A DNA stretch of 64,000 nucleotides from IMG/VR virus record IMGVR_UViG_3300043446_003193, positions 124,001 to 188,000 of that record. One strand, written 5' to 3'. The translations under genes were made by a program, and so were the position numbers. The notes under the pieces are model-generated. The model was not told the DNA's origin. It did no database searches and saw only the letters and a list, made by a program, of their open reading frames with translations. Positions within the stretch are counted from its first letter, which is position 1, and every line of letters starts with the position of its first letter. This document shows, in pieces, positions 1-55,787 of the stretch.

Positions 1-1878
1 TCCAATATATAAATCATCCCAAAGATGTGTAGGGTCTCCTAAACTATATGCACTATATGTTACATTAGTTGCAGGTATTACATTTTGATTTAATGAATTT
101 AAGTAAGATGCAGTTAATGAATTTACTGCGTTTGAAGCAGTTACATATGCTATTGGTGTCCAACTTGCAGTATAAGGTGAACCTGCTGAAACTTGTAAAA
201 CATATCCTGCATAAGATGAACTAATAGAAGGTAAGTCACCACCTATTGTACCAATTGCCCAACCTGCTGCCGCTTCAGGGAATGTAATTAGAGATGAAGT
301 GTTATCCGTTAATACAATTGTTTGAGGAATTATTTTCTCGTAATTACTGTCAAATGTTTGGATATTAACAAATCTATCTCCAAAATTATGTTCAAATCTC
401 CATTCTAAAGAAGATGTAAAACTTTGTTTAACTGTTCTACCATTCACTTCAATTATACCACCAATACCTGCTACCGCGTATCCAGCAACTGGTGTACCAA
501 ATTCTAAAACTAAAGTATTCACATCAGTTGCAGTAATGGTTTGTGGAAGAACTATTTGTCCGGAATTATTATAAACCGTTACATTTGGATATTGTACATT
601 TAAATTATGCGTGAATGTCCAAGTTGCTGCAGAGGTAGTTTGTGTATGTATTTTTCCACCTCCAGTTAATCCGGTCAATAGAGAACCATCACCTTTGAAT
701 GAACCAGTAAATGAACCAGTGAACGGGTCTGTTAAGGTTACAAATTGTGCAGATCCAGATATTAATGTAGGTTTTTCAGTTAATTCAGTAAATGTAATTG
801 GTGTACCTACTTGTCTATATCTTAAATCTAAAGATGCTGTTGTTTGTTCTGAACCACTAATAATTCCGCCTGGTTTATTTGCAATATTGTCCCAAGTTGT
901 TTGAGTTATTGAACCGCTTAAAACATATCTATTATCGTATGAAGCGGTCAATTGTGCAGATGAACTTACTAAACCATTTGATGCAGATATTGGGCCCGTT
1001 ACTTGTAAAGTACCATTAACTATTATTTTATTTCCACCCGTTTGAGTAATAATAGAATCGGAAATGTGGTCATCTCCACTTGCTACCGGAAGATATCCAG
1101 TTGTTAAACCAATTTCATTTCCCAAAGAACCCGTATTTTTAGGTCCTGCTATTAATATTGCCGAACTATATGCTGCTCCAGATGGATTTTCGTATATCCA
1201 ATGATTATTTACCGAATCCCACCAAAGAGAACCGGTTCCAGATGTACTTCCAGAATCTTGTACACTTATACCACCAAAACGAACTGCAGGTGTTGCTGTA
1301 TTTAATAAAACCGTATTTGTTCCAATACTTACTGCCGAACCCGTAATATTTTGAATTGATGATGTACCTTGAACAATTAAATTTTCAGTTACATATAAAG
1401 AACCACTCATTATTTGTGTTCCTTTAAATGTATTTGAACCAGTTGTTGCAAATGAAGATTCAATTACATCTAATCTTGTATCAATTGATGCGGATAAAAC
1501 ATTTGTACTTGCTGCACTTGCACTAAATGATGTTGCAACGGAGGAACTAAAGTCTCCAGTAACAGTTGAAACCGAAGCAGATAATGCTGAAATATTTGCA
1601 TTACTTGCACTTATTGATGTTGCAACGGAAGAAGAAAATGATTGTGTAAATGAATTAATAGCAGATAACGAAGTATCAACCGATGCCGATTTTGCTTCCA
1701 AAGAATTTAATCTCAATGCCTGTGAACCACTATCTGTTGATAATTCATTAAGCCTTTGATTAATTGAAGCGGAAGCAGCTAAAAACGAAGACGATACTGC
1801 TGTATATCTAGGTATTTCTGCTGTTTGTCCGGCTTGCTGTATTAAGGAACCGGTTATAATAGGACTATCTAAAATCAT
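1..1878 (-). CDS. Fibre/virion structural protein, truncated at the left window edge (not in ORF track)
   Basis: ATG at 1878 (MILDSPIITGSLIQQAGQ...). Segments I translated stay in this frame towards position 1. Shares ATTGSNTF, NLIVQG..NIG.N...RFGG..DSGS, QTTWDNIANKP and TWTFTHNL modules with the neighbouring fibre genes. Confidence 0.85.
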   Translation of the reverse strand, partial: MILDSPIITGSLIQQAGQTAEIPRYTAVSSSFLAASASINQRLNELSTDSGSQALRLNSLEAKSASVDTSLSAINSFTQSFSSSVATSISASNANISALSASVSTVTGDFSSSVATSFSASAASTNVLSASIDTRLDVIESSFATTGSNTFKGTQIMSGSLYVTENLIVQGTSSIQNITGSAVSIGTNTVLLNTATPAVRFGGISVQDSGSTSGTGSLWWDSVNNHWIYENPSGAAYSSAILIAGPKNTGSLGNEIGLTTGYLPVASGDDHISDSIITQTGGNKIIVNGTLQVTGPISASNGLVSSSAQLTASYDNRYVLSGSITQTTWDNIANKPGGIISGSEQTTASLDLRYRQVGTPITFTELTEKPTLISGSAQFVTLTDPFTGSFTGSFKGDGSLLTGLTGGGKIHTQTTSAATWTFTHNLNVQYPNVTVYNNSGQIVLPQTITATDVNTLVLEFGTPVAGYAVAGIGGIIEVNGRTVKQSFTSSLEWRFEHNFGDRFVNIQTFDSNYEKIIPQTIVLTDNTSSLITFPEAAAGWAIGTIGGDLPSISSSYAGYVLQVSAGSPYTASWTPIAYVTASNAVNSLTASYLNSLNQNVIPATNVTYSAYSLGDPTHLWDDLYIG

Positions 1879-1896
1879 TTCTCCGTTTTATTTAAG

Positions 1897-1905: not shown

Positions 1906-1912
1906 CTTTATG

Positions 1913-2236: not shown

Positions 2237-2250
2237 AATTATTTATTTTT

Positions 2251-5643: not shown

Positions 5644-5653
5644 TTATTTTTTA

Positions 5654-11520: not shown

Positions 11521-11529
11521 CTTCTTCTA

Positions 11530-11877: not shown

Positions 11878-11887
11878 AATTTATTTT

Positions 11888-15562: not shown

Positions 15563-15614
15563 ATCTATGGTTCTTATTACAGTATATACTAAAAAATGAC
15601 TTATATAAGTCTCT

Positions 15615-15623
15615 TATAAATAT
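15615..15623 (-). promoter_or_regulatory. Putative late promoter motif ATATTTATA
   Basis: Directly after a terminator, upstream of 15562. Confidence 0.65.
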
Positions 15624-15652
15624 AAAAGGATTGATGTTTCCACCAATCCTTT
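15624..15652 (-). terminator. Intrinsic terminator
   Basis: Minus strand AAAGGATTGGTG-GAAA-CATCAATCCTTTT: long stem, GAAA loop, U tract, downstream of 15680..17593. Confidence 0.75.
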
Positions 15653-15679
15653 CCAATTTAATTTTTTATGTTCGTTCTA

Positions 15680-42751: not shown

Positions 42752-44140
42752 TTAAAGTTTTACATTTATCATCCAAGCATTTTCTGCAAATTGTTCTTTT
42801 GATACTAATTCGTATTGAACTTGATTTATACCATCTTCCTTATAATTTATTTTTCCTTCCTGCATTTCCTTAACAAATCTTCTTTCGTTTTTTGCAGTTG
42901 GTTCACCCTTTATCCATTCTCCATTTACAAATCCCTCACTAGGATGTGGTAATGCGTAAAATCTTCCATTTCTTCTATATGGTGTATTATTACTACTTAC
43001 TTTAAATGTTTCATTTGTTATCTCTACATTATGTATCAATAAATCAGAAATTACATTATTTTTATCTTTTAAAAAATCAGATATATTTTCAGGTAAAACT
43101 ACATCATTGTAAATTTTAATATCTGCAATCTTTCCTTTTAAATAATTTGCTATAATTGGATTACATTCACTGCATGGATTTTTACCAATTAAAATATCAT
43201 TATTATATTTTTTTAATTTACCTTCAAATTCATGCGGTTTATATTCCAATGTTTCTGTTCTTGTATTTTTAATTAAATTACTATTACAATAAAAATATAT
43301 TTTATTTTCTTTAGAGTCTACCGAAACTGTTATCCATGTCCATTCTCCAAATCCTCTTTTTATCCATGCATAAATTTGATTATCGTTTTGAGAATATAAA
43401 GAAGCGGATATTGCTCTAGAATTATTAAATCCTATAAAATAAGATTCTTTTTTATCTATACTTAAAATTGGATATTCTACATATCGTTTATCTTTTATAC
43501 CTATTAACCATTCTTTATATTTTTCAGGCTGATCTTCAATTTTACACAAAATAGATAATGTATGTGATTGGGATAATAATTCCGATATACCAGTATCTTT
43601 TGGAATCGTTATATAAGAATTCTCTCCATCAAAATTAAAACAAGGAATATCATTGTATTCAAAAAATAAATTATCTTCTGTTAATCCTTCAAAACGACAT
43701 CTCCAAAATAGGTCATCATCTTCCATACCCCAATCCCAATATTCATTAGAGTAACCATTTGTTGCTTCTACCTGTTCTTTATTCATTAATACAACACCAC
43801 CGAAGTATTGTTCATAGTTTAATCTATATTTGTATTTAGATACGGCGGTTGCAATATGTGTTGGAAACTTGTCTGGATATGAATAATCACAACTATCGTT
43901 TTCCGGTAACATATCTACATCGTGAAAAGCAACATAATCACATCCATCTTCAAATGCATGTTTGGCTGCAATATTTTTCATCGCACCTCTATTGAATAAT
44001 TTATCATCCGTTTGGTGTACAATATAAAATTGATGTGGAATTCCTTTTTTGTTTAAAAATTTTGTAAGATGAGGAACTAACATTTTAAGATGATATTCCC
44101 TATCTCTATAAGGAACACATATTCCGAGTTTTTTTATCAT
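42752..44140 (-). CDS. GT7 (beta-1,4-galactosyltransferase-like) glycosyltransferase with inserted LamG/ConA-like domain
   Basis: VPYRDR..HL, FNRG, FHDVD, YFGGV, NGYSN.YW.WG.EDDD GT7 motifs; insert with FNFDG..SYI...W..ITV...GKIADIKIYN; GT7 C-terminus resumes at RF..LPH...DGIN.V.Y. Confidence 0.85.
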   Translation of the reverse strand: MIKKLGICVPYRDREYHLKMLVPHLTKFLNKKGIPHQFYIVHQTDDKLFNRGAMKNIAAKHAFEDGCDYVAFHDVDMLPENDSCDYSYPDKFPTHIATAVSKYKYRLNYEQYFGGVVLMNKEQVEATNGYSNEYWDWGMEDDDLFWRCRFEGLTEDNLFFEYNDIPCFNFDGENSYITIPKDTGISELLSQSHTLSILCKIEDQPEKYKEWLIGIKDKRYVEYPILSIDKKESYFIGFNNSRAISASLYSQNDNQIYAWIKRGFGEWTWITVSVDSKENKIYFYCNSNLIKNTRTETLEYKPHEFEGKLKKYNNDILIGKNPCSECNPIIANYLKGKIADIKIYNDVVLPENISDFLKDKNNVISDLLIHNVEITNETFKVSSNNTPYRRNGRFYALPHPSEGFVNGEWIKGEPTAKNERRFVKEMQEGKINYKEDGINQVQYELVSKEQFAENAWMINVKL

Positions 44141-44142
44141 AA

Positions 44143-44607
44143 CTATTTTCCTTTAGGAGACACATAAATTGTATCTCTTATAAGTATTTGTTTTTCCGTA
44201 TAAGGAGCATATACGGATGTATTATAACATTTAATATCTAAAAAATGACCAGCTTTTGTTGTTGGCATATTGACATATTCTATATTATTTATTTCTATTT
44301 CATTTAATTTATAATCTAATATTTTTATATTATTTCCTTCCTTTATTTGGGTATATAATTCATTTATTCTTATTTCCAATATTTCATCTGATTCATTTTT
44401 ATATAAAACATATGAATCTGGATGAAAAATAATTCCATCAATTTTGTAATAGTTTGGTTCTTTCAAAACTTTAGTAAACTCTATTGTTGCGGTTTTATAT
44501 TTTTCCTCAACAGGGCAATATCCTGTTAATGAGTTTACCTTTGGCTTTAAATCAATAATATTTTTAATTATTAATTCGTTATATTTTATATTCTCAAATA
44601 AATTCAT
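44143..44607 (-). CDS. Hypothetical protein
   Basis: 154 aa ORF packed between the Hint-domain gene and the GT7 gene. Confidence 0.6.
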   Translation of the reverse strand: MNLFENIKYNELIIKNIIDLKPKVNSLTGYCPVEEKYKTATIEFTKVLKEPNYYKIDGIIFHPDSYVLYKNESDEILEIRINELYTQIKEGNNIKILDYKLNEIEINNIEYVNMPTTKAGHFLDIKCYNTSVYAPYTEKQILIRDTIYVSPKGK

Positions 44608-44609
44608 AA

Positions 44610-47600
44610 TTAAGGAGTTATTTTACCACCTGGCCCTAAAACGTTGTGTACTAATATATTATTTGCAAAGTAAGTATCATTTGTTTCAACATCTAATGAA
44701 ATAAATTCATCTAATTCATCAACTCTTATTTTTTCTTCAATCATTTCCCAGTTACCATCTAAATTATACATCATATCACCAACTATAACGTCTTCTGCTC
44801 TTAAAAATTTATATTCATTATCTCTTTTTATAAAAATAGGATGTTCAAAAGTTATTTTTAATTTATCATTTATTACATAATGATAATGCCAGACTCCACT
44901 TGTAACAGATTTTACGGCACTCATAGAATCTACATAATCAAAAGTATTTGTAGAAAATGTTTTCCATGCATCTTCTTCTTCAGAAAATCCATCAATAGAA
45001 ATATTTTTTAATAAATCCCCTTCTATCAAATCTTCAACATTTTTTTCACTACCATCCCACATTAAAATTTTTGTACCTTTTGCTAAACACGTTCCGCCAC
45101 CTGTACAATCACAACCTGCTCCTGTGTATTTATATATCAAACAAGAGGAATTTGCTGTTCCAGAACACCCACTTTCAGATACTGCATATATTTCATAATA
45201 TATTGGGTTATCACATGCAATACTACTTATACTAAAAGCATATGATGTACCAAATGAACGAGAACCTTGATTTAATATACTACCTTCCGGTCCATAATCA
45301 AATGTACATTTATACCAAACTACATAATAAGTCGCCGCATTTTGTGCGTTTGCAGTACCTGTTCTGGAAAATGCGTATGTTAAAGTACCACAAGTTGGAG
45401 TATCCAATGAAACAGTAGGTGCAGTTATATTTCCAGATGCAGCTACTGCATTATATGAAATTGCACTATTTGTTGCGGTTGTTGATAATAATGTATCTGA
45501 TGAATTATATATTTTCGCTCTAAAATACATAGTAGTACCACTTGTTAGTGATATAAAAGCAGCATAATTAGTATTTGCTGTAATACTTGTAAATGTTTCT
45601 GCCGCCGTCCAAGTTGAATTATCCGTACTTTTTTCTATTACCAATTTTGTAGCAGTATCAATTTGACCAACCGAATATGTAGCAGTTACTCCACCACATA
45701 CTACTGATTTAGATACAAATGATAATGTATTTACTACACCTCTATTTCTTAATACAATATAATAATCAGTTCCTTGAGAAGTATCTGTTGATGATTTTTG
45801 CCCATGTATACGATATGTAGTTGTTACTCCTAAAGTAGCACTACTTACAACTCTTGCAGCTAAATAGTAATTACCATTTGTATATGGTAGACTGTTTCCA
45901 GAAGTATCACCTGTATTATATAATTGGAAGGTTTTTATATTTAGCGCACCTTCACCCTGTTGTGGAGATGTATTATCTGCTGTTTCCCAAAGTCCATTAT
46001 ATGTGTTTTGAAACATTCTAAACATACCATATGCGCCGGTTCCTGGTGCATTTCCGGAATCTACTGATACTGTCATTGTAGTATACGCACCTGGGAAATT
46101 ACTCCAAGTGTATTTATTATCCATTGATAATACGGTATGTATGGATGCCAAAGCCTTTGTGTTCGGTTCTAAATTATCAAATGTAATTACAGAAGAATTT
46201 GTACTAAATGTACCGCCAGTTCTACCACTCCAGGTATCTAAATTTATAATTCTAGTAGGAGTATATGTTGGTCCTTGATATGCGTATATACCATATAGTG
46301 TTGCAGGGGTATTTAATGTAAAAGTATAATCTAAATCTTCAACTAATTGATTTGCAGTCCAACTAGAATATTTTATTGTACCCCAGTCATCGGTTGCTTT
46401 TACTCTCATTTTATATGTACTACCAAAACTCAAACCAGTAAATGTAATACCCGATTGTGTTGTAAGAACAGTACCATTAGTATCTGCTATTTGGTATTCA
46501 ACTGTTATATTATCAGCAGTTAAATCAATAGTTCCATCATTTGAATCATATGTTAATAATCCTGCATATATACTCATTTCAGTATATCCTTTTGTAAATG
46601 CTACACTAGGAGTTCCTGTTATTGATGCTAATCTTTTACCCTTTACTGTTATTGAAATATCTTTAGACCTTTCACTACCAGCATTAATATATAAAGTCCA
46701 TGCATTAGTTGTACCGGAGTAAGTATATAAGTTACCCCACCATGTATAAGTTACTGTTCCTCTTGATGAAGAACTTAAAGTAGTTTTTGATGTTGTTGCC
46801 AACTTTCTACAAAATGTAGTACTGGTATTTGTTCTTATCAAATAAGTGCCATTATACGGGTTTGCACCATTAAAACTAAGTGGAGATGCTTGCATTCTAT
46901 TATTATCTAACCAAACATACCAATATCCACCCTGTGAGTTTGTCTCAGTTGGACCGTTTGTTGTATATGATGCATCTAATGTAAAATTAACTCCTCTAAT
47001 AGCATATCCGTCAACAAACCCACTTCCTCCTTTTACCACATCAATTGTTCCAGGTTCTCTAGTAACAGTAACTGTTTTATTAGTTAAAGTATGATAATAA
47101 TATAATCCTGAACTTATTGTATATGTTAAATAAACCGAACCATATCCATCACCAATTGTAGATGAATTACAAATTGCATCATATAAACTAAGTGCAGAAA
47201 AAGAAAAAGAAGCTACTGAATCTGGGTCTATTTGTGCATCAGTTAAACTTTGTCCTCCCGCACTTCCCCCATTTGGATAATATGCATCCAATCTTGCAGA
47301 TATTTTAGTGAAATTGCCAGATGATCTGGTTACTGAAAAAACAACAGACTGAACTTGAGAAAGTGTACCGGAATTTATGTTAGATGTTAAAGAATATCCG
47401 TATCCTTGATTTGGATACCCATATACTGTCACACTTGTTTCATTAAAATCAGATTGTCTATATGTACCACCAGATGCTTTTACATGATAATACCAAGTTT
47501 GATCAGCAGATGGAGCAGTCCAACCATTATGTGCTGTTGTATAAGTACCACTATTCAAATCTGCATAAGTTCCTCCAGACCCTACTTTGTATTGAAAGTT

Positions 47601-49406
47601 ATCATAAGTAAATGCAGTTGCTAATGATTTTGTTATACTAATAGAACCATTTGAATATTCTCTTCCAGTTACCCAACTTGCACCCAATCCAATTTGACTT
47701 TGATTTATTTTAAAACGAACACTAAAATTATCAGTTAATACAAATCCATTTCCATCTGTAATTGTGGCCGTATGTGTTGATGTTCCATCATTTGCAGATG
47801 TCGCAGGATTATTAACAGTTATAGTAATTACTCCAGATGCCGTTTTTGCTCCTGATGCGGAAACCGTGCTATCGGTTGACGTAGCAGAAACACTTGTAAC
47901 AGAAAATCCATTATCATTTGAACCATTAATAGTAACCGTTCCTGTAAAAGTTCTATTAGCTCCTGTTAAAACATAATCTTGATCATCAATTGTTAAAACT
48001 CCCTTTTGTGGTATTAATATATCTCCGGTTTCTGTATATCCGGATACAAATGTAGAATTGCCATCGCTTCTTCTTGCTCTTACTCTTGCTTTTGCATATT
48101 GTGCAGTTGTAGTTTTACCTGCAATAGTTACCGAAGGTGTTACATTTGTACCGGCTGCAACCAAAGAAGTCCATGCTCCATAAGAACCACCACTATCTTT
48201 AACAGCATAATCTATATCATAATTTAAAGTAGTTCCACTTACAGCTGCAGTCAAAGCAGTGACCGTTACACCAAATGATTGTCCAAAAGCAGAATATGCT
48301 GCACTAATAGATGGTGAAACCATAGCAACAGTTACATTCGTAGTTGTATGATTTCTAACACTACTATTACTACTATTTGTAATATTTACTCTAAGAGATT
48401 GACTACCTAAAGTATTATAATAAATTGATAAATTTTGAGAAGTTGATGTAGAAATACTTGCTCCTGTTAATACCCAATTATAAGATATTGCAATAGAATC
48501 GGGATTATATAAAACTGTTGAAGTAACAGAATATGCAACAAAAGGTTCTACACTCGTAGAAGCACCAATTGATACCGCCATTGGTCTTCTAAATGTAGTT
48601 GCCGTAGTACTTGCCGTATCAAATGGGTTTGCCGAATCTTTGACCACAATAGTATAATCATCATCGGCCGTATTACTTGAATTATTAAAAGTTGCAGTAT
48701 TTACATCTGCAGAACCATAACCTGCTCCATTAAAATTATAATAATACGGAGAAACACCACCTGCAACATTCACAGTAAAATCTACGGAACCGGTAGTATA
48801 ATTATACGTTCCTGCGCCAGTAAATGATGGAGAAGTTGTAACTGATGTAATTGTTAAATCAACTGCATTTACAAAAACTGTTTTAGAATCATTTGCTTGT
48901 TTATTTGAAGAGTTTATTCTAAGTTCTAATCGTAATGTGTTTGTAGAATTTGGTACAATATATGTATTACTATTATCAACATAAAAGTCAGAAGCATTAG
49001 TTACATTTCCGGTAAGAGTTGCAGGAAATACATTTGTTCCAGTATATACACCATTTACCCAGATTTTAATATATGCCGTTTCTCCGGACTGCATACCCGT
49101 CACAGTATATGTAAAATCTAATCTTTTACCTGATTGAGCATTTGTATTAGCAGGACTAGTTAAAGTATTTATTGTAATTGCAGGAACTTTACCTTCAAAT
49201 TCTACAAACTCATATTGACTTCCAGTAGGCCTTGCTCCAGTACTTGGGTTTAATACTCCGACAGTATTTGGTAAATCTCTGACAGTATTTGGGTCAACTG
49301 TACCGGTCAAAAATTGATTTGCAACATATGAACCACTTACTGTCGTAGTTGCAGTGTTAAGACCGGCAGAAGAACCTAAATCTCCAATTCGTATATTACT
49401 TGCCAT
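44610..49406 (-). CDS. Large Ig/FN3-like repeat tail protein with C-terminal Hint domain
   Basis: S/T-rich beta-sandwich repeats; GGT|CLAKGTKILMWDG...T.EHP...TYFANNILVHN. Confidence 0.8.
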   Translation of the reverse strand: MASNIRIGDLGSSAGLNTATTTVSGSYVANQFLTGTVDPNTVRDLPNTVGVLNPSTGARPTGSQYEFVEFEGKVPAITINTLTSPANTNAQSGKRLDFTYTVTGMQSGETAYIKIWVNGVYTGTNVFPATLTGNVTNASDFYVDNSNTYIVPNSTNTLRLELRINSSNKQANDSKTVFVNAVDLTITSVTTSPSFTGAGTYNYTTGSVDFTVNVAGGVSPYYYNFNGAGYGSADVNTATFNNSSNTADDDYTIVVKDSANPFDTASTTATTFRRPMAVSIGASTSVEPFVAYSVTSTVLYNPDSIAISYNWVLTGASISTSTSQNLSIYYNTLGSQSLRVNITNSSNSSVRNHTTTNVTVAMVSPSISAAYSAFGQSFGVTVTALTAAVSGTTLNYDIDYAVKDSGGSYGAWTSLVAAGTNVTPSVTIAGKTTTAQYAKARVRARRSDGNSTFVSGYTETGDILIPQKGVLTIDDQDYVLTGANRTFTGTVTINGSNDNGFSVTSVSATSTDSTVSASGAKTASGVITITVNNPATSANDGTSTHTATITDGNGFVLTDNFSVRFKINQSQIGLGASWVTGREYSNGSISITKSLATAFTYDNFQYKVGSGGTYADLNSGTYTTAHNGWTAPSADQTWYYHVKASGGTYRQSDFNETSVTVYGYPNQGYGYSLTSNINSGTLSQVQSVVFSVTRSSGNFTKISARLDAYYPNGGSAGGQSLTDAQIDPDSVASFSFSALSLYDAICNSSTIGDGYGSVYLTYTISSGLYYYHTLTNKTVTVTREPGTIDVVKGGSGFVDGYAIRGVNFTLDASYTTNGPTETNSQGGYWYVWLDNNRMQASPLSFNGANPYNGTYLIRTNTSTTFCRKLATTSKTTLSSSSRGTVTYTWWGNLYTYSGTTNAWTLYINAGSERSKDISITVKGKRLASITGTPSVAFTKGYTEMSIYAGLLTYDSNDGTIDLTADNITVEYQIADTNGTVLTTQSGITFTGLSFGSTYKMRVKATDDWGTIKYSSWTANQLVEDLDYTFTLNTPATLYGIYAYQGPTYTPTRIINLDTWSGRTGGTFSTNSSVITFDNLEPNTKALASIHTVLSMDNKYTWSNFPGAYTTMTVSVDSGNAPGTGAYGMFRMFQNTYNGLWETADNTSPQQGEGALNIKTFQLYNTGDTSGNSLPYTNGNYYLAARVVSSATLGVTTTYRIHGQKSSTDTSQGTDYYIVLRNRGVVNTLSFVSKSVVCGGVTATYSVGQIDTATKLVIEKSTDNSTWTAAETFTSITANTNYAAFISLTSGTTMYFRAKIYNSSDTLLSTTATNSAISYNAVAASGNITAPTVSLDTPTCGTLTYAFSRTGTANAQNAATYYVVWYKCTFDYGPEGSILNQGSRSFGTSYAFSISSIACDNPIYYEIYAVSESGCSGTANSSCLIYKYTGAGCDCTGGGTCLAKGTKILMWDGSEKNVEDLIEGDLLKNISIDGFSEEEDAWKTFSTNTFDYVDSMSAVKSVTSGVWHYHYVINDKLKITFEHPIFIKRDNEYKFLRAEDVIVGDMMYNLDGNWEMIEEKIRVDELDEFISLDVETNDTYFANNILVHNVLGPGGKITP

Positions 49407-52400
49407 TAGATAAAACCTGTTTTAAAGTATTTACTTCTTTTTTTAAATTTTGTATTTGTTTAACCATAATTGGAATTAGTTCATTATATTTTATGGTTAA
49501 ATACTCTCCCATTATTCTTCCATCTGTTAAATTTGGATATATTTTTTCAACATCTTGTGCAATAAATCCATAATGTTTTTTATTTTCACTATCAGAATTC
49601 CAACTATATGCAACCGGATGTAATCTATCCATATCTTCAATTTCAGTTTCATCTATATCAACTATATTTTTTTTCAATCTTATATCAGAACTAAGTGATG
49701 TTGAAAAACCGGCAATATCACCTTTTACATGCAATTCTCCATAGTGAGCAAAATATCCTGCAGATTTTATATTTGCATTAGCAGCTGTTGGTGTAGCAAT
49801 ATCTTCAACTTTAAGAAAATTACCAGTACTATCCTGTGAACTATTAAATAATGCCTGTAATCCTCTTTCTGAAATTTCTACTTGTTTTGTTAATGAAGTA
49901 GCTGTTAAAGATAATCCTTTTGCATAATAATTTGTTGAAGATGGTGAATATGAATCTACTCCAATACTTTCTGCCCAAATTGCATATCCAGCTGGTATAG
50001 TACCAAATCCAAATAAAGTAAATGAATCATAATAATCAATATGCCATCTTGTTTTTCTATAATTCGCAACCAAACCATTTGATTTTGTAGTGGATATTTG
50101 TAATGGGTTTGTTGTTTTACCAAGAGTTATAAATTGAAAAGAAGTATCTGCAAATTCTTCTTGAGTACTTGTAGTAGATGGAGAAACTGTTCTAGAAATT
50201 GAACCAATTGATGTTCCACCATAAGATAATGTACTTGTTACAGTTGCAGTACCAGTAACCGAATCAAAAGAAGTATAAAAATCAATATATTGTCCATCCA
50301 TTTGTGAAAGAGTAGTATATGATGTTCCTTTTTTAGTATTAAAATATGATATAAAAGCAGTAACAGCTGCTTCAGCACTACCACCTATCCATCCTCTAGT
50401 GATAGAAGAATAATAATTTAAATTCGTTGGGTCTTGACTTAAATTATATTTTATATGATATGCAATATTTAGAGCTGCTTGATCAACAGTTGAAAAAGTA
50501 CCAGTAGAAGCTACATATGTATACTCCATTGTTGGAGCATTGTTCCATTCTAAATCAATTCTATATTTAACCGATGCGTTAATTGAATATGTTGATGTAG
50601 CAGATAAACTGGTATACATATTAGTACTTGTTGCCGACAAAGTAGCTACCGTAGAACCATTAACATTATACAAATACAAATTTTGTGGTGTTGAAGTTCC
50701 TATACTAAAATAAGTTTGAGCGGTAGTTGCCGTTATTGCACTACCTGCTCCTGGAACTGTTGTTAACAATTCACCTGGATGAATAAGTACACGGTTTCCT
50801 GCATAGGTACTTTCCCCTGTAATTTGAATATAATTATCAGCCCCAGTTCCTCCAGCATTTAAAGTAATTTTATCTTTAGAAATGCTATTTTGACCAATAA
50901 CCCACCCACCAATAGTACCATCAGTAGCAGTTATTTTTCCAGATATGTTCGCGTTGGAAGCTACTAAAGCACCTGCAGTATCTACTCTAAATGGAGCAGA
51001 GTTAAATGCCGTATTACCCGCATGAAATCCTGCAATTGACATTACCGCTTGTGAATTACCGGATGAATTACCTGCTATTACTCTTGATTGACCACCATCT
51101 AATATCACACCATTTGTTGCAGTACCACCAATTAATTTTCCTGCTTGAATTTCAAATCCACCAATTGATCCAGTTTGAGCAGTTAATGTTGTTGCAGATA
51201 TTGCACCACCAATATCAACTATATTTGTTGCAGATGCATCGTATTTAAAATAATTACTACCACTAACAAAACTTACTTTTGGTACAAATGAACTTCCACT
51301 AATTCCTAACCAAATACCATTAGTACCATATGATTGAACTCCTTGACCTATTGAAACAAATGGTTTGGTAGTTCCACCTGCTAATGTTATATTTGCAGCA
51401 GAACCAGATGCATTAGTACCAATATTTAAAGTATTTTTAACATACGATTCATCAAATATTGCAATCTTAGCTGCAACAAAGAAATCTTGTGTTCCCAAAT
51501 ATTCCCAATAAGAATTGCTTGCTCCATCGGTAGGTGCATTTCCAGTTGTTTGCTGTAATGTTGCGTAATATTTTGTAACACCTCCTGAACTTTGATAAAC
51601 GGCATCTCTTCTTGAAGAACCCGCAACAGTTGTGTAATAATAAGTTGTGCCTGCTGCATATTCTCCTCTTAACACAATACCAGGACCCGTCGCTCCGGTA
51701 TTTCCATCAGTACCATCCGATGAAACATTTACATTATGTGTTTTATAAAAAGTTGTAGAAGTTCCTTCCGAATCTACATATGATCCGGTAATGCTTACAA
51801 TTAATCCACTTGTAGAAGATGGTGTAGAAGGTGTTATTGTTGTATATCCATCACCATCTACACCGGCATTTGTACCATTTGTTACAGAAGATATTCTAAA
51901 TGAAGGTATAACATATGGAGAAGTGGCATCATACGCATATGCACTACCACCTTCATTTACATATAATTTAAATGAAGAAGGAGTACCATATGAACCTGCT
52001 GTACTTTTTGTAATAGTTTGTCCATCTTTTTCAATTGATACAACTACCGCCGGTGGTGCCGCTAATGCTTTAGAAACGGTAGCTACAACATTTTTAGTAC
52101 CAGATGTACCTTCACTATCGGTATAGTTTACAGGTATTGTTACTTGAGCAGTTGAACCAGTTATTGAAGATGCCGTTGATGTTATTGTTATAACATTTGA
52201 CGAAACTGTTCCTGCCAATCCATTTGTATATGTTGGTGTACCTATTGAAGTAAATCTACTTGTACCAGATTCCAAAGCAGTTATCGTTAATGCGGTTGGA
52301 GTAGCAGAACCACTTGTTTTTGAATTTGCATTTATTGATTGTGCAGATGGAGATACTGCTACTAATACATTTGGTGTACCTGCTTTAGCTTTTGAATATG

Positions 52401-55400
52401 TTACTAATTTTACAAATGTACTATCACTTCCTCTACCATCTCTGTAAGTTACTTTTAAATTTATACTACCACTATCAGCGGATAACGCGGTTATAGAATA
52501 GTTGTTATTTGTAAGTACTGCTGTTACATTTGAAGATGATGAAATACTTGCACTAAATTTATTGTTTCCAATTGTAGATGCGTATGAAATATCTTCACTT
52601 CCAACTTTTACTGATATAGAACCACTACTTGCTAAAAACCCACCAAAAACAGTTCCACCAGAATATGCAGGAAATGTTGTATTTTCGTTTGATACTGTCA
52701 CTGCAATTTGTGATTCAGCTATTACCGGAGTAATTGTAATTGTATCACTATAAACTGCATTATTTAAATCATAAGCAGTAAATGTATATGTTGTTGCGCC
52801 AGATGAATATGAATAATCACTACCATTTATACTATATGATTGTACACCGGTGGTATTATTGTTAGAACCAACGGTCAAAGCTGGTTTACTACTACCACTA
52901 GTTACAGTAATTTCATTTGTAGTACTTCCTAAATTATTTCTTTTTACATCAATTGTTATAGTTTGTCCAGATGGTGATAAACTCAAATCGGTCATTTTAT
53001 AAAAAAACTGATTAGCGTTAGAAACTGCATTTAAGTTTTTACTCTTATCACCTTTTAATACACCTTCCAATTGTACCGAAGATGAATATCCTCCTTTATT
53101 AAAATAATAAGTTCCTTTATGTGTAAGTTGGGTAGGAGTAGCATATGACCAAGATGCTACATTTGTACCTAGCATTGCAACATCGTGTTGATCATCTCCA
53201 CTAAAAACACGATAAACAGACTCGGTAGATTTTCCTATATATTCGGTAGATATTAAAGCTAATTTTGGTAAATAAGAACCAGAAGTTATGTAAATACTAC
53301 CAGAAACAATGTTATTTGTTAGCTTTATATCAATAAAATCATTAAGTTGTGCAGGAACATTATTATCGTCTGGATCATACACAAATTGATTTTTATTAGC
53401 AATTGCAATGAAATTTTGACCATCAATACCATCTGCACCAACAGCTCCTTGATCAACTCTATAAATGTTTACCAAATCTCTTACATCTTCGCAAGATGCC
53501 GTATATTGAACTCTACTAATTTTTGATGAAGATATTGATCCAGTAAAATTAGAAACCAAAAGAGTTGCGGATGTTTCCGTTACATTTGTTAATAAACCAG
53601 GATAAAAAGGTTCAGATGCATAAACCGATGGATTAATGTAATCACCATTTGCATCAAATGCTGAAGAGTAGAATGTTACAGAACCGGTTAATCCTATTTT
53701 TGAAATATCAAAATTTATTGAAGATACTCCAATTGTTTCTCCTGAGCCAGAAAAACTAAATAGTGTATTATCTGGAGTTACTGTTAATGATTTTTGAACA
53801 ATTGTATCTGTTCCACCAGTAAATGTAATTTCTTTTTCTAAAGTAACAGGTACATAATTGTTATTAATATCGTAAAATTCAAAACGAAAATCGTAAGTAT
53901 CATTATTTACTTTAGTCGGAACATTTACATTTAGAGTAACTTCATTAGGAGAAAAGTTTGTTTCTTGAGAAGCTCGTAAACTTATGTTTGATAAATACCA
54001 TTCTCCTTGATGAATATTAAAAAATATTTGTCCCTGCCCATCAGTATCTGGTTTAAAATTTATTTGTTGTTTATCAAATCTTCTAAAAGATTCACTAACA
54101 TTAAATTCACCTAAAAGTTTTCCATATCCAAGATCAGAGTCCTCAACTACGAATGCCGGTCCAACACCAAACACATTTAATTTTCCATAACCAAAAGAAG
54201 ATGATTGCAATAAAAGACTGAAATCTAATTGATATTCAGTATTACTTAGAAAATCAATATCATTGTGATTATAAAAAACTCTCTGTGGATGTTGTGTTGT
54301 ATTTAAAGTATTATCGTCTTGTAGTTTTACTGAAGATGCTAATACTGAATCATTTTGTGTAGCAGTATAATATGTATTTTCTTCATGTTTTTTATATTTC
54401 CAAAAATCATCTATTATTTTTTGAGATGAAAATTGTCCTATTCTAACATTTACACTTCCACTATATGCATCAGTTTGAAATAGTTCATTTGATTCTAACT
54501 GAATATCTTCTAATAAACTATAATTTCCAATATCTGATTTTCTTTTACCAAATATTTTCAAACGATTTACATCACCACTAAATGTTTCCAAATTAGCTAT
54601 TTTTATTTTAGCATAAGAAGAACTAATTGCAGAGTTTGTTAAAGTTACACTTTCGTTATATGGTAATGTAAATGATGCGGAAGAAAAATCAGTTACATAT
54701 TGTACGGCGTTTGTGGCATTTGAAGATGTTTCATAATAAGGAATTGTTGCTAATGCTTTTTTAGAATTAACAACATCTTTTATAATTGTAGAATATGATT
54801 GATTTAATCCAGTTATCGTAATTGTTTCACCTTCCATAGATGATGAAAAATTACTTCCACTAATTTTTAATTCATAAATTGTATCACCTTTGAAAGTTCT
54901 AAAATTTGAACCAGATGTAGGTTGTACCGAAACACCATCAACACTTCCACTAATAGTTACTCTATTTACAGTTCTATTGTATATTGGTAAAATTGTTTCA
55001 GTTATATCTACCGTCGGTCTACGATAGAAACGAATCTTTGTTGTATTTGCAATAATAGGATTTACATTCACTACTTTTTGCCATCTAACATTATATTGAT
55101 TTTCCCAGTTTGAAGGGATTGGTGTTAGTAATCCATTAGCATCTTCATATTCACTTAATTCTCCTAATATAGTAATTGTACATGGACCAAATGCAGTATC
55201 TGGATAAACATATACTGCCACTACTTTTGAAGTTCCTTCATAATATTCAGGAATACCTTCTCCTGGTTCGTGATAAATTACATTTCCTAATGCATCTTTA
55301 ATTTCTATCTTTATAAGAGTATCGGCAACTAATTCAGGAGAACCCTGAATTAAAAAAGAGTTTTTACCACCAGAAAAAGTTCCAGGTAGTTCGGTGATTC

Positions 55401-55491
55401 TAAAGTATCTACTATTTGGATCAGTATCTTCTAAAAATATATTATATCTCTCTAAATTTTCTGGAAATAGAGTCTTTTTAAGAATGGCCAT
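49396..55491 (-). CDS. Giant tail/central fibre protein with C-terminal peptidase S74 chaperone
   Basis: 2031 aa; G.IGG(F/W).I repeats; ends SSDIRLKKNI...PVAYSWN...GFIAQDV...YNELIPIMV. Confidence 0.8.
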   Translation of the reverse strand: MAILKKTLFPENLERYNIFLEDTDPNSRYFRITELPGTFSGGKNSFLIQGSPELVADTLIKIEIKDALGNVIYHEPGEGIPEYYEGTSKVVAVYVYPDTAFGPCTITILGELSEYEDANGLLTPIPSNWENQYNVRWQKVVNVNPIIANTTKIRFYRRPTVDITETILPIYNRTVNRVTISGSVDGVSVQPTSGSNFRTFKGDTIYELKISGSNFSSSMEGETITITGLNQSYSTIIKDVVNSKKALATIPYYETSSNATNAVQYVTDFSSASFTLPYNESVTLTNSAISSSYAKIKIANLETFSGDVNRLKIFGKRKSDIGNYSLLEDIQLESNELFQTDAYSGSVNVRIGQFSSQKIIDDFWKYKKHEENTYYTATQNDSVLASSVKLQDDNTLNTTQHPQRVFYNHNDIDFLSNTEYQLDFSLLLQSSSFGYGKLNVFGVGPAFVVEDSDLGYGKLLGEFNVSESFRRFDKQQINFKPDTDGQGQIFFNIHQGEWYLSNISLRASQETNFSPNEVTLNVNVPTKVNNDTYDFRFEFYDINNNYVPVTLEKEITFTGGTDTIVQKSLTVTPDNTLFSFSGSGETIGVSSINFDISKIGLTGSVTFYSSAFDANGDYINPSVYASEPFYPGLLTNVTETSATLLVSNFTGSISSSKISRVQYTASCEDVRDLVNIYRVDQGAVGADGIDGQNFIAIANKNQFVYDPDDNNVPAQLNDFIDIKLTNNIVSGSIYITSGSYLPKLALISTEYIGKSTESVYRVFSGDDQHDVAMLGTNVASWSYATPTQLTHKGTYYFNKGGYSSSVQLEGVLKGDKSKNLNAVSNANQFFYKMTDLSLSPSGQTITIDVKRNNLGSTTNEITVTSGSSKPALTVGSNNNTTGVQSYSINGSDYSYSSGATTYTFTAYDLNNAVYSDTITITPVIAESQIAVTVSNENTTFPAYSGGTVFGGFLASSGSISVKVGSEDISYASTIGNNKFSASISSSSNVTAVLTNNNYSITALSADSGSINLKVTYRDGRGSDSTFVKLVTYSKAKAGTPNVLVAVSPSAQSINANSKTSGSATPTALTITALESGTSRFTSIGTPTYTNGLAGTVSSNVITITSTASSITGSTAQVTIPVNYTDSEGTSGTKNVVATVSKALAAPPAVVVSIEKDGQTITKSTAGSYGTPSSFKLYVNEGGSAYAYDATSPYVIPSFRISSVTNGTNAGVDGDGYTTITPSTPSSTSGLIVSITGSYVDSEGTSTTFYKTHNVNVSSDGTDGNTGATGPGIVLRGEYAAGTTYYYTTVAGSSRRDAVYQSSGGVTKYYATLQQTTGNAPTDGASNSYWEYLGTQDFFVAAKIAIFDESYVKNTLNIGTNASGSAANITLAGGTTKPFVSIGQGVQSYGTNGIWLGISGSSFVPKVSFVSGSNYFKYDASATNIVDIGGAISATTLTAQTGSIGGFEIQAGKLIGGTATNGVILDGGQSRVIAGNSSGNSQAVMSIAGFHAGNTAFNSAPFRVDTAGALVASNANISGKITATDGTIGGWVIGQNSISKDKITLNAGGTGADNYIQITGESTYAGNRVLIHPGELLTTVPGAGSAITATTAQTYFSIGTSTPQNLYLYNVNGSTVATLSATSTNMYTSLSATSTYSINASVKYRIDLEWNNAPTMEYTYVASTGTFSTVDQAALNIAYHIKYNLSQDPTNLNYYSSITRGWIGGSAEAAVTAFISYFNTKKGTSYTTLSQMDGQYIDFYTSFDSVTGTATVTSTLSYGGTSIGSISRTVSPSTTSTQEEFADTSFQFITLGKTTNPLQISTTKSNGLVANYRKTRWHIDYYDSFTLFGFGTIPAGYAIWAESIGVDSYSPSSTNYYAKGLSLTATSLTKQVEISERGLQALFNSSQDSTGNFLKVEDIATPTAANANIKSAGYFAHYGELHVKGDIAGFSTSLSSDIRLKKNIVDIDETEIEDMDRLHPVAYSWNSDSENKKHYGFIAQDVEKIYPNLTDGRIMGEYLTIKYNELIPIMVKQIQNLKKEVNTLKQVLSNGK

Positions 55492-55601: not shown

Positions 55602-55787
55602 ATGAAATACGCAATGTTGCAAATTAAAAAAGAAACCCATGAACTTCTCAAATCATATTGTGAAGAACACGGGTTTAAAATGGGTAGTTTAGTTGAAAAT
55701 CTAATCAAAAAACACGTTGGTGTTTCAAAACCTCAATCAGGTGTGTTGAAGGCTGATAAAGTTACTGTTAGAAATCAATCTTACTAA
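55602..55787 (+). CDS. Small DNA-binding regulator, ribbon-helix-helix-like
   Basis: Only credible plus-strand gene. A short beta strand (YAMLQI) precedes two helices (ETHELLKSYCEEHG.KM..LVE.LI); it has its own upstream ATATTTATA motif. Confidence 0.7.
   Translation: MKYAMLQIKKETHELLKSYCEEHGFKMGSLVENLIKKHVGVSKPQSGVLKADKVTVRNQSY

What the first reader, a model, noticed from the sequence alone, without database searches (positions are those of the whole stretch)
42752..44140. GT7 catalytic domain split by an inserted LamG-like lectin domain
Seen: after WGMEDDDLFWR a roughly 200-aa LamG/ConA-like segment intervenes, then the GT7 C-terminal part resumes (RFYALPH...DGINQVQY). Established: GT7 is best known from animal beta-1,4-galactosyltransferases, where this region lies near the acceptor site. 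Inference: the insert selects acceptor glycans or virion proteins.
Basis: partly seen in the sequence, partly recalled or inferred. Interest (0 to 1): 0.6.

Follow-up and report, generated by a model that had tools for sequence, protein, structure and literature searches.

The report
Phage GT7 glycosyltransferase with nested LamG
A freshwater jumbo-phage gene encodes an animal-type (GT7) galactosyltransferase with a lectin-like LamG domain built into the middle of its catalytic domain; it belongs to a large, unstudied, phage-only family whose genes sit beside tail-fibre genes, which suggests it adds sugars to the fibres.

Summary
ORF 42752..44140 (-), 462 aa, matches Pfam Glyco_transf_7N and Glyco_transf_7C at residues 3-155. 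A Laminin_G_3 domain follows, and the GT7 core resumes at about residue 392. A confident AF2 model (pLDDT 87, pTM 0.83) superposes on Drosophila beta4GalT7 across both flanks (Z 26.5). Residues about 161-386 form a LamG/pentraxin beta-sandwich (Z 17-19).

All donor, metal and catalytic motifs are intact, and there is no membrane anchor. Insert-free 219-aa phage GT7 proteins fix the insertion point: the beta-hairpin just before the metal-binding His that opens the lid loop.

The architecture is widespread in phages. It occurs on 374 IMG/VR contigs and in dozens of 50%-identity clusters, all labelled Uroviricota. It was absent from 50,697 deposited phage genomes and from all but three MAGs among 185,579 species genomes. 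Every member is annotated as hypothetical.

In the window the gene is the last of a tightly packed four-gene tail-fibre unit. In the sister clade, paired paralogues lie in glycan cassettes downstream of (Gly-Thr/Ser-Ser)n collagen-like fibres.

Best reading: a cytoplasmic UDP-hexose beta-transferase whose LamG module targets glycosylated fibre proteins. The acceptor is inferred, not shown. Rated a new variant of a known kind; interest 0.6.

The parts
42752..44140 (-). Complete gene for the 462-aa GT7-LamG protein (P0001); stop codon at 42752-42754
   Evidence: The start is supported by the shared N-terminus of 33 homologues.
43670..44140 (-). GT7 catalytic core, N-terminal part (residues 1-157): UDP-binding P-Y-R-x-R and F-N-R motifs, D-V-D, W-G-x-E-D-D-D
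   Evidence: Pfam Glyco_transf_7N and 7C. PDB phmmer E 2.6e-36 to beta4GalT7. Mean pairwise identity 75% in A1 and 49% in A3.
42968..43669 (-). Nested LamG/pentraxin-like beta-sandwich with its two-stranded connector (residues about 158-391)
   Evidence: Pfam Laminin_G_3 171-354. VIA-align Z 17-19 to PAPP-A LNS and PTX3, range 161-386. Boundaries from insert-free relatives. Present at 228-280 aa in all 53 diverged relatives; 47 of 53 hit LamG_3.
42755..42967 (-). GT7 catalytic core, C-terminal part (residues 392-462): L-P-H metal/lid hinge, lid loop and helix, DG-x-N-x-x-x-Y strand
   Evidence: VIA-align to 3lw6_A covers model 1..462. Colinear HMM stretch 431-453. H399, N418 and G437 are conserved in A3.
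43913..43921 (-). D74-V-D76, the DxD metal/UDP motif (aligns with bovine beta4GalT1 D252-V-D254)
   Evidence: Alignments. Invariant in A1 and A3. Role taken from PMC4202792.
43712..43732 (-). W137-G-M-E140-D141-D-D143: small flexible loop Trp and catalytic base
   Evidence: D141 aligns with Drosophila beta4GalT7 D211. This is visible because the D211N mutant chain differs at exactly that column. D141 is invariant in A3.
42944..42946 (-). H399, the candidate metal ligand at the N-terminal hinge of the lid, eight residues after the insert ends
   Evidence: At least 90% conserved in A3. In insert-free P0236 the equivalent L-N-H aligns with the M344/H347 segment of beta4GalT1. Metal site taken from PMC7565966. 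The exact column is ambiguous.
43805..43816 (-). Y109-E-Q-Y112, aligned with beta4GalT1 Y286 (acceptor contact) and Y289 (donor Gal versus GalNAc selector)
   Evidence: Alignment. Y286 role from PMC4202792; Y289 role from my own knowledge. Position 109 is a fixed F/Y difference between the two paralogue clades.
49396..55491 (-). First gene of the unit: 2031-aa fibre protein with C-terminal Peptidase_S74 (endosialidase-type intramolecular chaperone); 24% Ser+Thr
44610..49406 (-). Second gene: 1598-aa protein, 26% Ser+Thr, with a weak C-terminal Hint-like match; overlaps the previous gene by 11 nt
44143..44607 (-). Third gene: 154-aa protein of unknown function, two bases before the GT start; found upstream of the GT gene in the clade-A loci whose gene order was printed, except L015

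Best explanation
The gene encodes a soluble, cytoplasmic, metal-dependent inverting glycosyltransferase of family GT7. It most likely moves galactose (or another hexose) from a UDP-sugar onto the 4-OH of a sugar already present on the acceptor. The catalytic domain is a minimal GT7 core without the animal stem and membrane anchor. A roughly 230-aa LamG/pentraxin-type beta-sandwich is nested at the tip of the beta-hairpin that leads into the metal-binding His and the flexible lid loop.

I propose that the LamG module is a built-in acceptor-targeting (lectin or protein-docking) domain. It would hold a glycan-bearing macromolecule so that the catalytic pocket can extend its glycan, much as the lectin domain does in ppGalNAc-transferases, or as alpha-lactalbumin does in trans for beta4GalT1. 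The most likely acceptors are Ser/Thr-rich virion fibre proteins made late in infection. Other phage-encoded transferases (GT2 and GT4 types) would supply the priming sugars.

What is shown: the architecture, the fold, the intact catalytic motifs, the family distribution and the gene order. What is inferred: the donor identity, the role of the LamG module, and fibre proteins as acceptor.

My probabilities: nested architecture 0.95 or more; active GT7-type enzyme about 0.8; LamG as acceptor-targeting module about 0.5; fibre or virion glycoprotein as acceptor about 0.35-0.4.
For: Architecture and fold. ESM Atlas models of other clusters superpose on the whole two-domain model (TM 0.85 over 449 residues), so the domain arrangement appears fixed.

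Catalytic competence: P10/R12/R14, F49-N50-R51, D74-V-D76, G114-G115, W137, E140-D141 and H399 are invariant or nearly so across 53 relatives down to 25% identity. D141 aligns with the catalytic D211 of beta4GalT7.

Soluble: the alignment starts at residue 2-4 of the protein, and the highest 19-residue hydropathy is 0.64.

Lectin-like, specificity-type behaviour of the insert:
- Its best fold matches are ligand-binding LamG, pentraxin and CBM40 modules.
- Pfam Sialidase N-terminal and Pentaxin hits occur in 11 and 9 of 53 relatives.
- Insert identity is 21% against 49% for the core.
- No free-standing close relative of the insert was found.

Link to fibres:
- In the window the gene is the last of four abutting or overlapping genes that begin with an S74-chaperone fibre. 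The intergenic motif ATATTTATA (12 of 16 copies lie in the 4.5% intergenic DNA, P 1e-13) is absent inside this block.
- The same neighbourhood (fibre genes upstream, the 1361-aa gene and terminase downstream) recurs in the clade-A loci. In L015 the fibre gene is a different family but still carries S74.
- In clade B the cassette lies 3-7.5 kb downstream, on the same strand, of collagen-like fibres. Their repeats are Gly-(Thr 54%/Ser 37%)-(Ser 81%), up to 329 triplets, and at least two scanned examples carry S74. This holds in 20 of 39 loci with enough upstream DNA.

Other transferases that could prime: GT2 x3, GT4-like, and a HAD-NTP-transferase fusion in the same genome. A GT2-like gene lies directly upstream of the paralogue pair in clade B. 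All characterised GT7 enzymes use sugar acceptors (my knowledge; PMC4202792).
Against: No biochemical or binding evidence exists, and the acceptor rests on gene order alone.
- Synteny across related phages is inherited, so the 20 loci are not 20 independent events.
- High Ser+Thr content is typical of phage fibres in general.
- The window's fibres lack the (G-T/S-S)n repeats, and the genome has no collagen repeat above the Pfam cut-off.
- The phage's main glycan cluster lies about 105 kb away.
- The spatial relation of the LamG domain to the acceptor pocket could not be measured.
- Few insert residues are conserved family-wide. That also fits a merely structural domain.
- Fixed differences between the two paralogue clades lie mostly in the GT7 core rather than the insert.
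Confidence: 0.45

Rival explanations
1. The enzyme works on a non-protein glycan in the infected cell, such as a lipid-linked oligosaccharide, LPS or capsule precursor, or a phage-specified polysaccharide. The LamG domain would bind that polysaccharide, in the way a CBM binds its substrate in glycoside hydrolases.
For: Relatives sit in large cassettes resembling polysaccharide loci: NDP-sugar epimerase/dehydratase, DegT aminotransferase, UDP-glucose dehydrogenase, mannose-1-P guanylyltransferase, methyltransferases and GT2. A source names some insert-free relatives 'glycosyltransferase involved in capsule biosynthesis'. LamG/CBM40-type folds commonly bind free glycans.
Against: The protein has no membrane segment. 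No Wzx, Wzy or initiating phosphoglycosyltransferase families appeared among the Pfam hits listed for the neighbouring genes, although these families were not searched for specifically. The gene is in a fibre unit in the window's clade. The family is essentially absent from cellular genomes: 3 MAG contigs in 185,579 species.
Confidence: 0.25
2. The enzyme glycosylates phage DNA (hydroxymethylated bases) to evade restriction, and the LamG domain grips DNA or a replisome partner.
For: DNA glycosylation is the classical role of phage glycosyltransferases in T4-like phages (cited in PMC12619734). The head and packaging genes of this phage are T4-like.
Against: The complete 209-kb genome has no thymidylate-synthase/dCMP-hydroxymethylase homologue. 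No TET/JBP hit was found, but the control for that search was uninformative. To my knowledge, the known DNA glucosyltransferases are GT-B or other folds, not GT7. The gene lies among late structural genes, not replication genes. LamG folds are not DNA binders.
Confidence: 0.05
3. The enzyme is a normal GT7 transferase, but the LamG insert does not recognise the acceptor. It would serve as a scaffold, for example for oligomerisation, for docking to another enzyme of the pathway or to an assembly chaperone, or for controlling lid closure.
For: Few insert residues are conserved across the family. The fixed paralogue differences lie mainly in the core, including acceptor-loop positions 109 and 136. 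The high pTM and the reproducible domain arrangement suggest a rigid structural unit. The insertion sits at the hinge of the lid.
Against: The domain has been retained at 228-280 aa in every diverged member over deep divergence, while insert-free enzymes work without it. This argues for an added function, and LamG/pentraxin/CBM40 relatives are typically ligand binders.
Confidence: 0.2

Closest known systems
Animal beta-1,4-galactosyltransferase 7 (Drosophila 3lw6/4lw3, human 4irp/4irq) and beta4GalT1 (GT7)
   Same: Same GT-A catalytic core: Z 26.5, rmsd 2.0 over 210 residues, 33-41% identity. Same D-V-D, F-N-R, W-G-x-E-D-D-D and DG-x-N-x-x-x-Y motifs, and the catalytic Asp is conserved (D141 = D211).
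   Different: No stem or transmembrane anchor, and the first roughly 46 positions of the Glyco_transf_7N profile are missing. A 230-aa LamG domain is nested in the hairpin before the metal-binding His. A single L-P-H replaces the M-x-x-H of beta4GalT1. The protein is cytoplasmic and phage-encoded, and its acceptor is unknown.
Insert-free phage GT7 proteins of about 219 aa (P0236, P0218, P0198, P0222)
   Same: Closest relatives of the core: 48-55% identity over residues 1-160. Also found on large phage-like contigs within glycan clusters. Also lack the animal N-terminal region.
   Different: They have a short hairpin of about 12 residues where P0001 carries the LamG domain, and they align end to end with beta4GalT1 (E 1.6e-43). 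Their neighbours differ: GT11, Nucleotid_trans, Methyltransf_21 and UDP-galactopyranose mutase.
Lactose synthase (beta4GalT1 plus alpha-lactalbumin)
   Same: A GT7 enzyme whose acceptor choice is set by an extra protein module that acts beside the closed lid (PMC4202792, PMC7565966).
   Different: Alpha-lactalbumin is a separate lysozyme-fold protein acting in trans. Here the extra module is a covalently nested LamG fold. The analogy is functional only and untested.
Polypeptide GalNAc-transferases (GT27: GT-A catalytic domain plus ricin-type lectin domain)
   Same: A GT-A transferase fused to a lectin module that reads earlier glycosylation on Ser/Thr-rich substrates and steers further sugar addition (my knowledge). 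This is the working model proposed here.
   Different: A different GT family. The lectin is C-terminal and flexibly tethered, not nested, and it has a beta-trefoil fold rather than a LamG fold.
Virion glycosylation systems: mycobacteriophage capsid and tail-tube O-glycosylation (Freeman et al. 2023, cited); glycosylated collagen-like BclA of Bacillus anthracis; Mimivirus collagen glycosylation (the last two from my knowledge)
   Same: Virus- or cell-encoded transferases encoded next to structural genes that decorate surface proteins. Collagen-like Gly-X-Thr repeats serve as dense O-glycosylation substrates.
   Different: To my knowledge, none of these uses a GT7 enzyme or a nested lectin domain. 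Glycosylation of the fibres discussed here has not been shown.

Membership tests
CAZy GT7 / Pfam Glyco_transf_7N + Glyco_transf_7C | Significant match to both family profiles above the curated cut-offs | tested here: met
   7N scores 74.8 bits (cut-off 27) and 7C scores 73.3 bits (cut-off 23). All 53 diverged relatives match both profiles.
CAZy GT7 / Pfam Glyco_transf_7N + Glyco_transf_7C | GT-A fold superposable on solved beta4GalT structures, including the C-terminal strands | tested here: met
   3lw6_A: Z 26.5, rmsd 2.0, 210 of 241 residues, model range 1..462. Foldseek E 3.5e-15.
CAZy GT7 / Pfam Glyco_transf_7N + Glyco_transf_7C | DxD metal/UDP motif and the W-G-x-E-D-D motif with the catalytic Asp | tested here: met
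   D74-V-D76 and W137-G-M-E-D141-D-D are aligned column for column. D141 falls at the D211N position of 4lw3. These residues are invariant in A3.
CAZy GT7 / Pfam Glyco_transf_7N + Glyco_transf_7C | Metal-binding Met/His at the start of a long flexible lid loop | tested here: inconclusive
   H399 is at least 90% conserved and sits in the right segment. HMMER aligns this segment in two different ways, and no coordinates were available to check the geometry. pLDDT dips to 68 in residues 401-410, as expected for a lid.
CAZy GT7 / Pfam Glyco_transf_7N + Glyco_transf_7C | Inverting transfer of Gal or GalNAc from a UDP-sugar to the 4-OH of a sugar acceptor | not testable with these tools
   Needs an enzyme assay. 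A Tyr at the beta4GalT1 Y289-equivalent position (Y112) suggests a Gal/Glc donor rather than GalNAc; this is inference from my own knowledge.
CAZy GT7 / Pfam Glyco_transf_7N + Glyco_transf_7C | Type II membrane topology with stem region (animal members) | tested here: not met
   The alignment begins at residue 2-4, no hydrophobic segment is present (maximum 0.64), and 7N profile positions 1-46 are absent. This feature belongs to the animal Golgi enzymes, not to the catalytic family.
LamG / concanavalin A-like lectin superfamily (Pfam Laminin_G_3) | Profile match above the cut-off | tested here: met
   30.7 bits against 27.6, residues 171-354, covering the whole profile 1-151. 47 of 53 relatives match, best E 4.9e-25.
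LamG / concanavalin A-like lectin superfamily (Pfam Laminin_G_3) | Two-sheet jelly-roll beta-sandwich fold | tested here: met
   The model is all-beta in this range. Z 14-19 to PAPP-A LNS, pentraxins, neurexin/laminin LG and CBM40, with 155-186 residues aligned.
LamG / concanavalin A-like lectin superfamily (Pfam Laminin_G_3) | Ligand-binding (often Ca2+-dependent) site on the sandwich rim | not testable with these tools
   No coordinates or ligand prediction were available. The conserved F-N-N-S-R and I-E-Y-P motifs in the closer subfamily are candidates only and are not conserved family-wide.

The most novel reading that the evidence does not exclude
Freshwater and other aquatic jumbo phages carry a phage-only lineage of GT7 enzymes that acquired a nested LamG 'reader' domain and then duplicated. 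Together with GT2-type primers (and radical-SAM enzymes in some lineages), they would build a dense mucin-like or collagen-like O-glycan coat on tail fibres, including fibres made of hundreds of Gly-Thr-Ser triplets. The LamG domain would read the growing glycan or peptide and couple that recognition to lid closure. This would be a new mode of acceptor control in GT-A transferases and a new class of heavily glycosylated phage fibres.
Probability: 0.25. Interest if true: 0.8.

Novelty: new variant of a known kind. Interest (0 to 1): 0.6.

Why it matters
GT7 is treated as an essentially metazoan Golgi family. Here it appears as a large, diverse lineage restricted to tailed phages, in a minimal soluble form and in a form with a lectin-type domain nested at the lid hinge.

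If the LamG module steers acceptor choice, this would be a natural one-chain counterpart of the beta4GalT1/alpha-lactalbumin specifier system. It would also be a compact, cytoplasmically expressed scaffold for glyco-engineering.

If the acceptors are fibres, including (Gly-Thr-Ser)n collagen-like fibres, then virion glycosylation extends well beyond mycobacteriophages into abundant freshwater jumbo phages. That would bear on host recognition, particle stability and grazing or defence evasion.

The hypothesis is directly testable: express the protein, run UDP-sugar assays with and without the insert, and carry out glycoproteomics on related isolates.

Tried and rejected
1. Deposited phage genomes. 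tblastn of P0001 and of the insert-free P0236 against 50,697 INPHARED records, plus megablast of 12 kb of the window, found nothing. No annotated or cultured reference exists.
2. PHROGs gave no family for P0001.
3. Origin of the insert. BLAST of the insert against all 1,369 neighbour proteins, including free-standing LamG proteins, gave no hits outside the family. The word-index search with the insert alone found only truncated family members. The origin remains untraced.
4. Literature. Searches on GT7, galactosyltransferase, Glyco_transf_7C and B4GALT7 combined with phage terms found no description of phage GT7 enzymes. The 'moraphage' paper mentions core glycosyltransferases without family detail, and I could not link that lineage to this one.
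5. DNA-modification partners. No thymidylate-synthase-like hydroxymethylase was found. The TET/JBP search was blank, but its control was uninformative.
6. Partners of the sister clade in the window's genome. No radical SAM, epimerase, collagen repeat above the Pfam cut-off or prolyl-hydroxylase-type oxygenase was found. None of these is an obligatory partner.
7. The 154-aa neighbour. It has no Pfam family and no significant similarity to the Hint proteins nearby.
8. Sigma-70 promoter and terminator scans of the fibre block were at or below shuffle expectation.
9. The paralogue fixed-difference analysis did not single out the insert.
10. No complex-prediction job was sent. Gene adjacency alone did not justify one, and enzyme-substrate pairs are poorly detected.
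11. Read laying was not used. No RNA run holds the stretch.
12. One script call returned no answer and was repeated.
Full report
**1. The object**

The window is bases 124001-188000 of a 209,443-bp IMG/VR virus record that CheckV rates complete. Every ORF of 200 aa or more lies on the minus strand, and GC content is about 32%.
- PHROGs identify a T4-type major head protein, portal and large terminase in the window.
- The nearest cultured capsids are Microcystis phage Mel-JY01 (55%) and Flavobacterium phage vB_FspM_immuto (53%).
- Near-identical DNA occurs only in freshwater metagenomes.

The finding is ORF 42752..44140 (-), 462 aa, stored as P0001.

**2. Checking the observation**

Pfam gives three domains, all above the curated cut-offs:
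- Glyco_transf_7N, residues 3-86.
- Glyco_transf_7C, residues 95-155. This match stops at profile position 62 of 78.
- Laminin_G_3, residues 171-354.

phmmer against PDB aligns residues 2-154 with beta4GalT7 and beta4GalT1 at E 2.6e-36 to 1e-29. A family profile adds a colinear, individually non-significant match of the DG-x-N-x-x-x-Y strand near the C-terminus.

An AF2 model built on 34 homologues is confident: pLDDT 87.4, pTM 0.83.
- VIA-align places 210 of the 241 residues of Drosophila beta4GalT7 on model range 1..462 (Z 26.5, rmsd 2.0).
- Residues 161/164-376/386 match LamG/pentraxin sandwiches: PAPP-A Z 18.7, PTX3 17.7, a Bacteroides carbohydrate-binding protein 16.5, sialidase CBM40 14.5. 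Foldseek agrees.
- ESM Atlas models of other clusters superpose on the whole two-domain model (TM 0.85 over 449 residues). The relative placement of the two domains is therefore reproducible.

The insert is about 230 aa rather than about 200.

**3. Where exactly the insert sits**

A search with residues 1-160 found complete GT7 proteins of about 219 aa on large contigs, 48-55% identical over that part.
- In the joint alignment they lack everything between about residue 158 and about residue 391 of P0001.
- One of them, P0236, aligns end to end with beta4GalT1 (E 1.6e-43). Its short hairpin and L-N-H align with the segment of beta4GalT1 that ends in Met344/His347.
- Those two residues, with Asp254, form metal site I (PMC7565966). 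They belong to the long flexible loop, whose closure over the donor creates the acceptor site (PMC4202792).

The LamG domain therefore replaces the turn of the hairpin immediately before the lid hinge. H399, eight residues after the insert, is the candidate metal ligand. The model shows long connecting strands (158-171, 373-382, 388-396) and lower confidence at 401-410, as expected for a lid. The distance from the LamG domain to the acceptor pocket could not be measured, because no coordinates are returned.

**4. Is it an active enzyme?**

The UDP-binding, metal-binding and catalytic residues are invariant or nearly so, both in 34 close relatives and in 53 relatives down to 25% identity. They are:
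- P10-Y-R12-x-R14
- F49-N-R51
- D74-V-D76
- Y109/Y112-F-G-G
- W137-G-x-E140-D141-D-D
- H399 and G437

D141 falls on the column of the catalytic Asp211 of Drosophila beta4GalT7. This can be seen directly because the D211N mutant chain differs at exactly that column.

There is no hydrophobic segment (maximum 19-residue hydropathy 0.64), and the protein starts at the first core strand. It is a soluble cytoplasmic enzyme, unlike the animal Golgi proteins. A Tyr at the position of beta4GalT1 Tyr289 suggests a Gal/Glc rather than a GalNAc donor; this rests on my own knowledge and is inference.

**5. The family**

- The word-index search found 1,857 proteins. The best 120 are all 447-506 aa with the same architecture apart from one truncated 330-aa fragment, and the only source names are 'hypothetical protein' and one 'unnamed protein product'.
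- The exhaustive representative search found 5,301 GT7-like representatives (203 at E 1e-30 or better). Dozens of these are 450-510-aa clusters down to 27% identity.
- In 53 such representatives the insert is always present at 228-280 aa. Of these, 47 hit Laminin_G_3, 11 hit the sialidase N-terminal lectin domain and 9 hit Pentaxin.
- The insert evolves faster than the core: mean pairwise identity is 21%, against 49% for the N-terminal core. Few insert residues are conserved family-wide.
- IMG/VR holds 374 contigs that encode a relative, ten of them longer than 200 kb.
- All ESM Atlas clusters with this architecture are labelled Viruses/Uroviricota.
- Among 185,579 species-representative genomes only three MAG contigs carry it, one of them a 248-kb contig binned as Flavobacteriaceae.
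- None of 50,697 deposited phage genomes has any GT7 match.

**6. Gene context**

I called ORFs on 83 fetched loci plus the window and clustered the proteins.

Clade A comprises the window and L005-L015, at 59-78% identity.
- It has one copy in a conserved order: giant fibre genes, a 154-aa gene, the GT, a 1361-1454-aa multidomain gene, two small genes, then terminase.
- In the window, the 2031-aa protein carries a C-terminal Peptidase_S74 fibre chaperone, and the 1598-aa protein ends in a weak Hint-like match.
- The four genes overlap or are two bases apart.
- A motif, ATATTTATA on the coding strand, lies 4-53 nt upstream of most of the genes it marks. Twelve of its 16 copies fall in the 4.5% of DNA that is intergenic (P 1e-13). 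None lies inside the four-gene block. A near-match precedes the block and a perfect copy follows it.
- The GT therefore appears to be the last gene of a fibre transcription unit.

Clade B comprises about 72 loci at 46-51% identity.
- It has two, sometimes three, tandem paralogues.
- These sit in a conserved cassette: free-standing LamG or C1q-like proteins, Methyltransf_24, a GT2-like protein, a roughly 79-aa protein, the GT7-LamG pair, then one to five radical-SAM proteins and sugar-nucleotide enzymes.
- In 20 of the 39 loci with at least 7.5 kb of upstream DNA, a collagen-like ORF lies 3-7.5 kb upstream. It is on the same strand in all but one of them.
- The repeats of these ORFs are Gly-(Thr 54%/Ser 37%)-(Ser 81%), up to 329 triplets, and two of the three scanned also carry Peptidase_S74.

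A FastTree rooted on the insert-free proteins separates an upstream-copy clade from a downstream-copy clade. It places the window's protein, with clade A, inside the downstream-copy clade. This is a quick tree and should be read with caution. Fixed differences between the two copies lie mostly in the core, including positions aligned with acceptor-contacting Tyr286 and the Trp314 loop of beta4GalT1. That pattern fits two enzymes with different acceptors acting in sequence.

**7. The rest of the window's genome**

- A separate glycan cluster lies at about 50-62 kb: three GT2, a GT4-like protein, Methyltransf_24 and a HAD-nucleotidyltransferase fusion.
- There is no radical SAM, no epimerase, no collagen repeat above the Pfam cut-off, no prolyl-hydroxylase-type oxygenase and no thymidylate-synthase-type hydroxymethylase.

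**8. Interpretation**

Shown:
- A nested LamG-in-GT7 architecture.
- Intact catalytic machinery.
- A phage-only family of considerable depth.
- Linkage to fibre genes in two clades.

Inferred: the enzyme extends a sugar on a glycan-bearing macromolecule, because all characterised GT7 enzymes use sugar acceptors. The LamG module supplies acceptor targeting, and the acceptors are Ser/Thr-rich fibre proteins primed by other phage transferases.

Rivals are action on a lipid-linked or free polysaccharide, DNA glycosylation, and a non-targeting structural role for the insert. DNA glycosylation is disfavoured by the missing hydroxymethylase and the late-gene context. None of the rivals is excluded by experiment.

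**9. Comparison and novelty**

By every feature that could be tested, the catalytic part belongs to GT7. The exceptions are the animal membrane topology, which is not met, and the exact metal ligand, which is inconclusive. The insert belongs to the LamG/ConA-like superfamily.

I found no description of phage GT7 enzymes or of a lectin domain nested in a GT7 core. The closest working analogies are ppGalNAc-transferases with their lectin domain and lactose synthase with alpha-lactalbumin. I rate it a new variant of a known kind, interest 0.6.

Noticed in passing
window, + strand coordinates 1897, 15615, 17627, 18035, 25385, 32700, 35604, 38565, 42671, 60555, 61528, 63472: A conserved intergenic motif, ATATTTATA on the coding (-) strand, lies 4-53 nt upstream of the start codons of most genes it marks. 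Twelve of its 16 occurrences fall in the 4.5% of the window that is intergenic (binomial P 1e-13). It is probably a phage promoter element. A near-match sits 16 nt upstream of the 2031-aa fibre gene.
   Followed up: partly
window 1-16000 and genome C1:101000-140500, plus 173420-173692: At least 14 large ORFs share a roughly 120-aa N-terminal domain (tblastn E 1e-12 to 1e-26), and four ORFs carry Peptidase_S74 chaperone domains. The phage seems to encode an unusually large set of different fibres on a common attachment domain.
   Followed up: partly
window 38582-42667 (-): A 1361-aa multidomain protein lies directly downstream of the GT and is conserved there in clade A. It has an N-terminal cytidylyltransferase/NMN-adenylyltransferase-like domain (G-R-F-Q-P-F-H-x-G-H), a low-complexity Lys/Pro/Gln-rich linker, an H-E-x-x-H motif and a K-T-D-G ligase-like motif. 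Only the first of these is supported by Pfam.
   Followed up: partly
window 44610-49406 (-), residues about 1440-1590: The 1598-aa Ser/Thr-rich fibre-like protein ends in a weak Hint/intein-like segment (PT-HINT E 0.004). In L015 a separate 230-aa PT-HINT protein (E 1.4e-5) occupies the slot of the 154-aa gene. This may be a self-cleaving fibre terminus.
   Followed up: partly
window 55768-58914 (-): A single 1048-aa ORF fuses a calcineurin-like phosphoesterase (Mre11/SbcD-type) with an SMC/Rad50/SbcC-type ATPase.
   Followed up: no
L021:24-4262, L046:1894-4068, L026:66-2144 and 17 further clade-B loci: Collagen-like phage fibre proteins are built almost entirely of Gly-Thr-Ser / Gly-Ser-Ser triplets, up to 329 triplets, and two of the three scanned carry Peptidase_S74 chaperone ends. 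They lie upstream of the glycan cassette.
   Followed up: partly
L002-L004, L021-L084 (clade B cassettes): One to five paralogous radical-SAM proteins of about 460 aa (170 copies in 68 loci) directly follow the GT7-LamG pair. A conserved acidic helical protein of about 79 aa precedes the pair. Their roles are unknown.
   Followed up: no
genome C1:50400-62000 (locus L092): A second glycan cluster lies outside the window: three GT2, one GT4-like protein, Methyltransf_24 and a HAD-phosphatase/NTP-transferase fusion. The same fusion is also seen beside the insert-free GT7 genes in L087.
   Followed up: partly
L085/L086 and L087/L088: The insert-free 219-aa GT7 genes sit on other large phage-like contigs. 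Their neighbours are GT11 (fucosyltransferase-type), GT2, Nucleotid_trans, Methyltransf_21, UDP-galactopyranose mutase, a ClpB-like ATPase, a ribosomal protein S21 gene and an Mtd_N (diversity-generating retroelement target) protein.
   Followed up: no
protein P0029: A 506-aa 'unnamed protein product, partial [Cyprideis torosa]' (an ostracod) scores 528 bits against the phage protein. It probably reflects phage DNA in that animal assembly rather than an animal gene.
   Followed up: no
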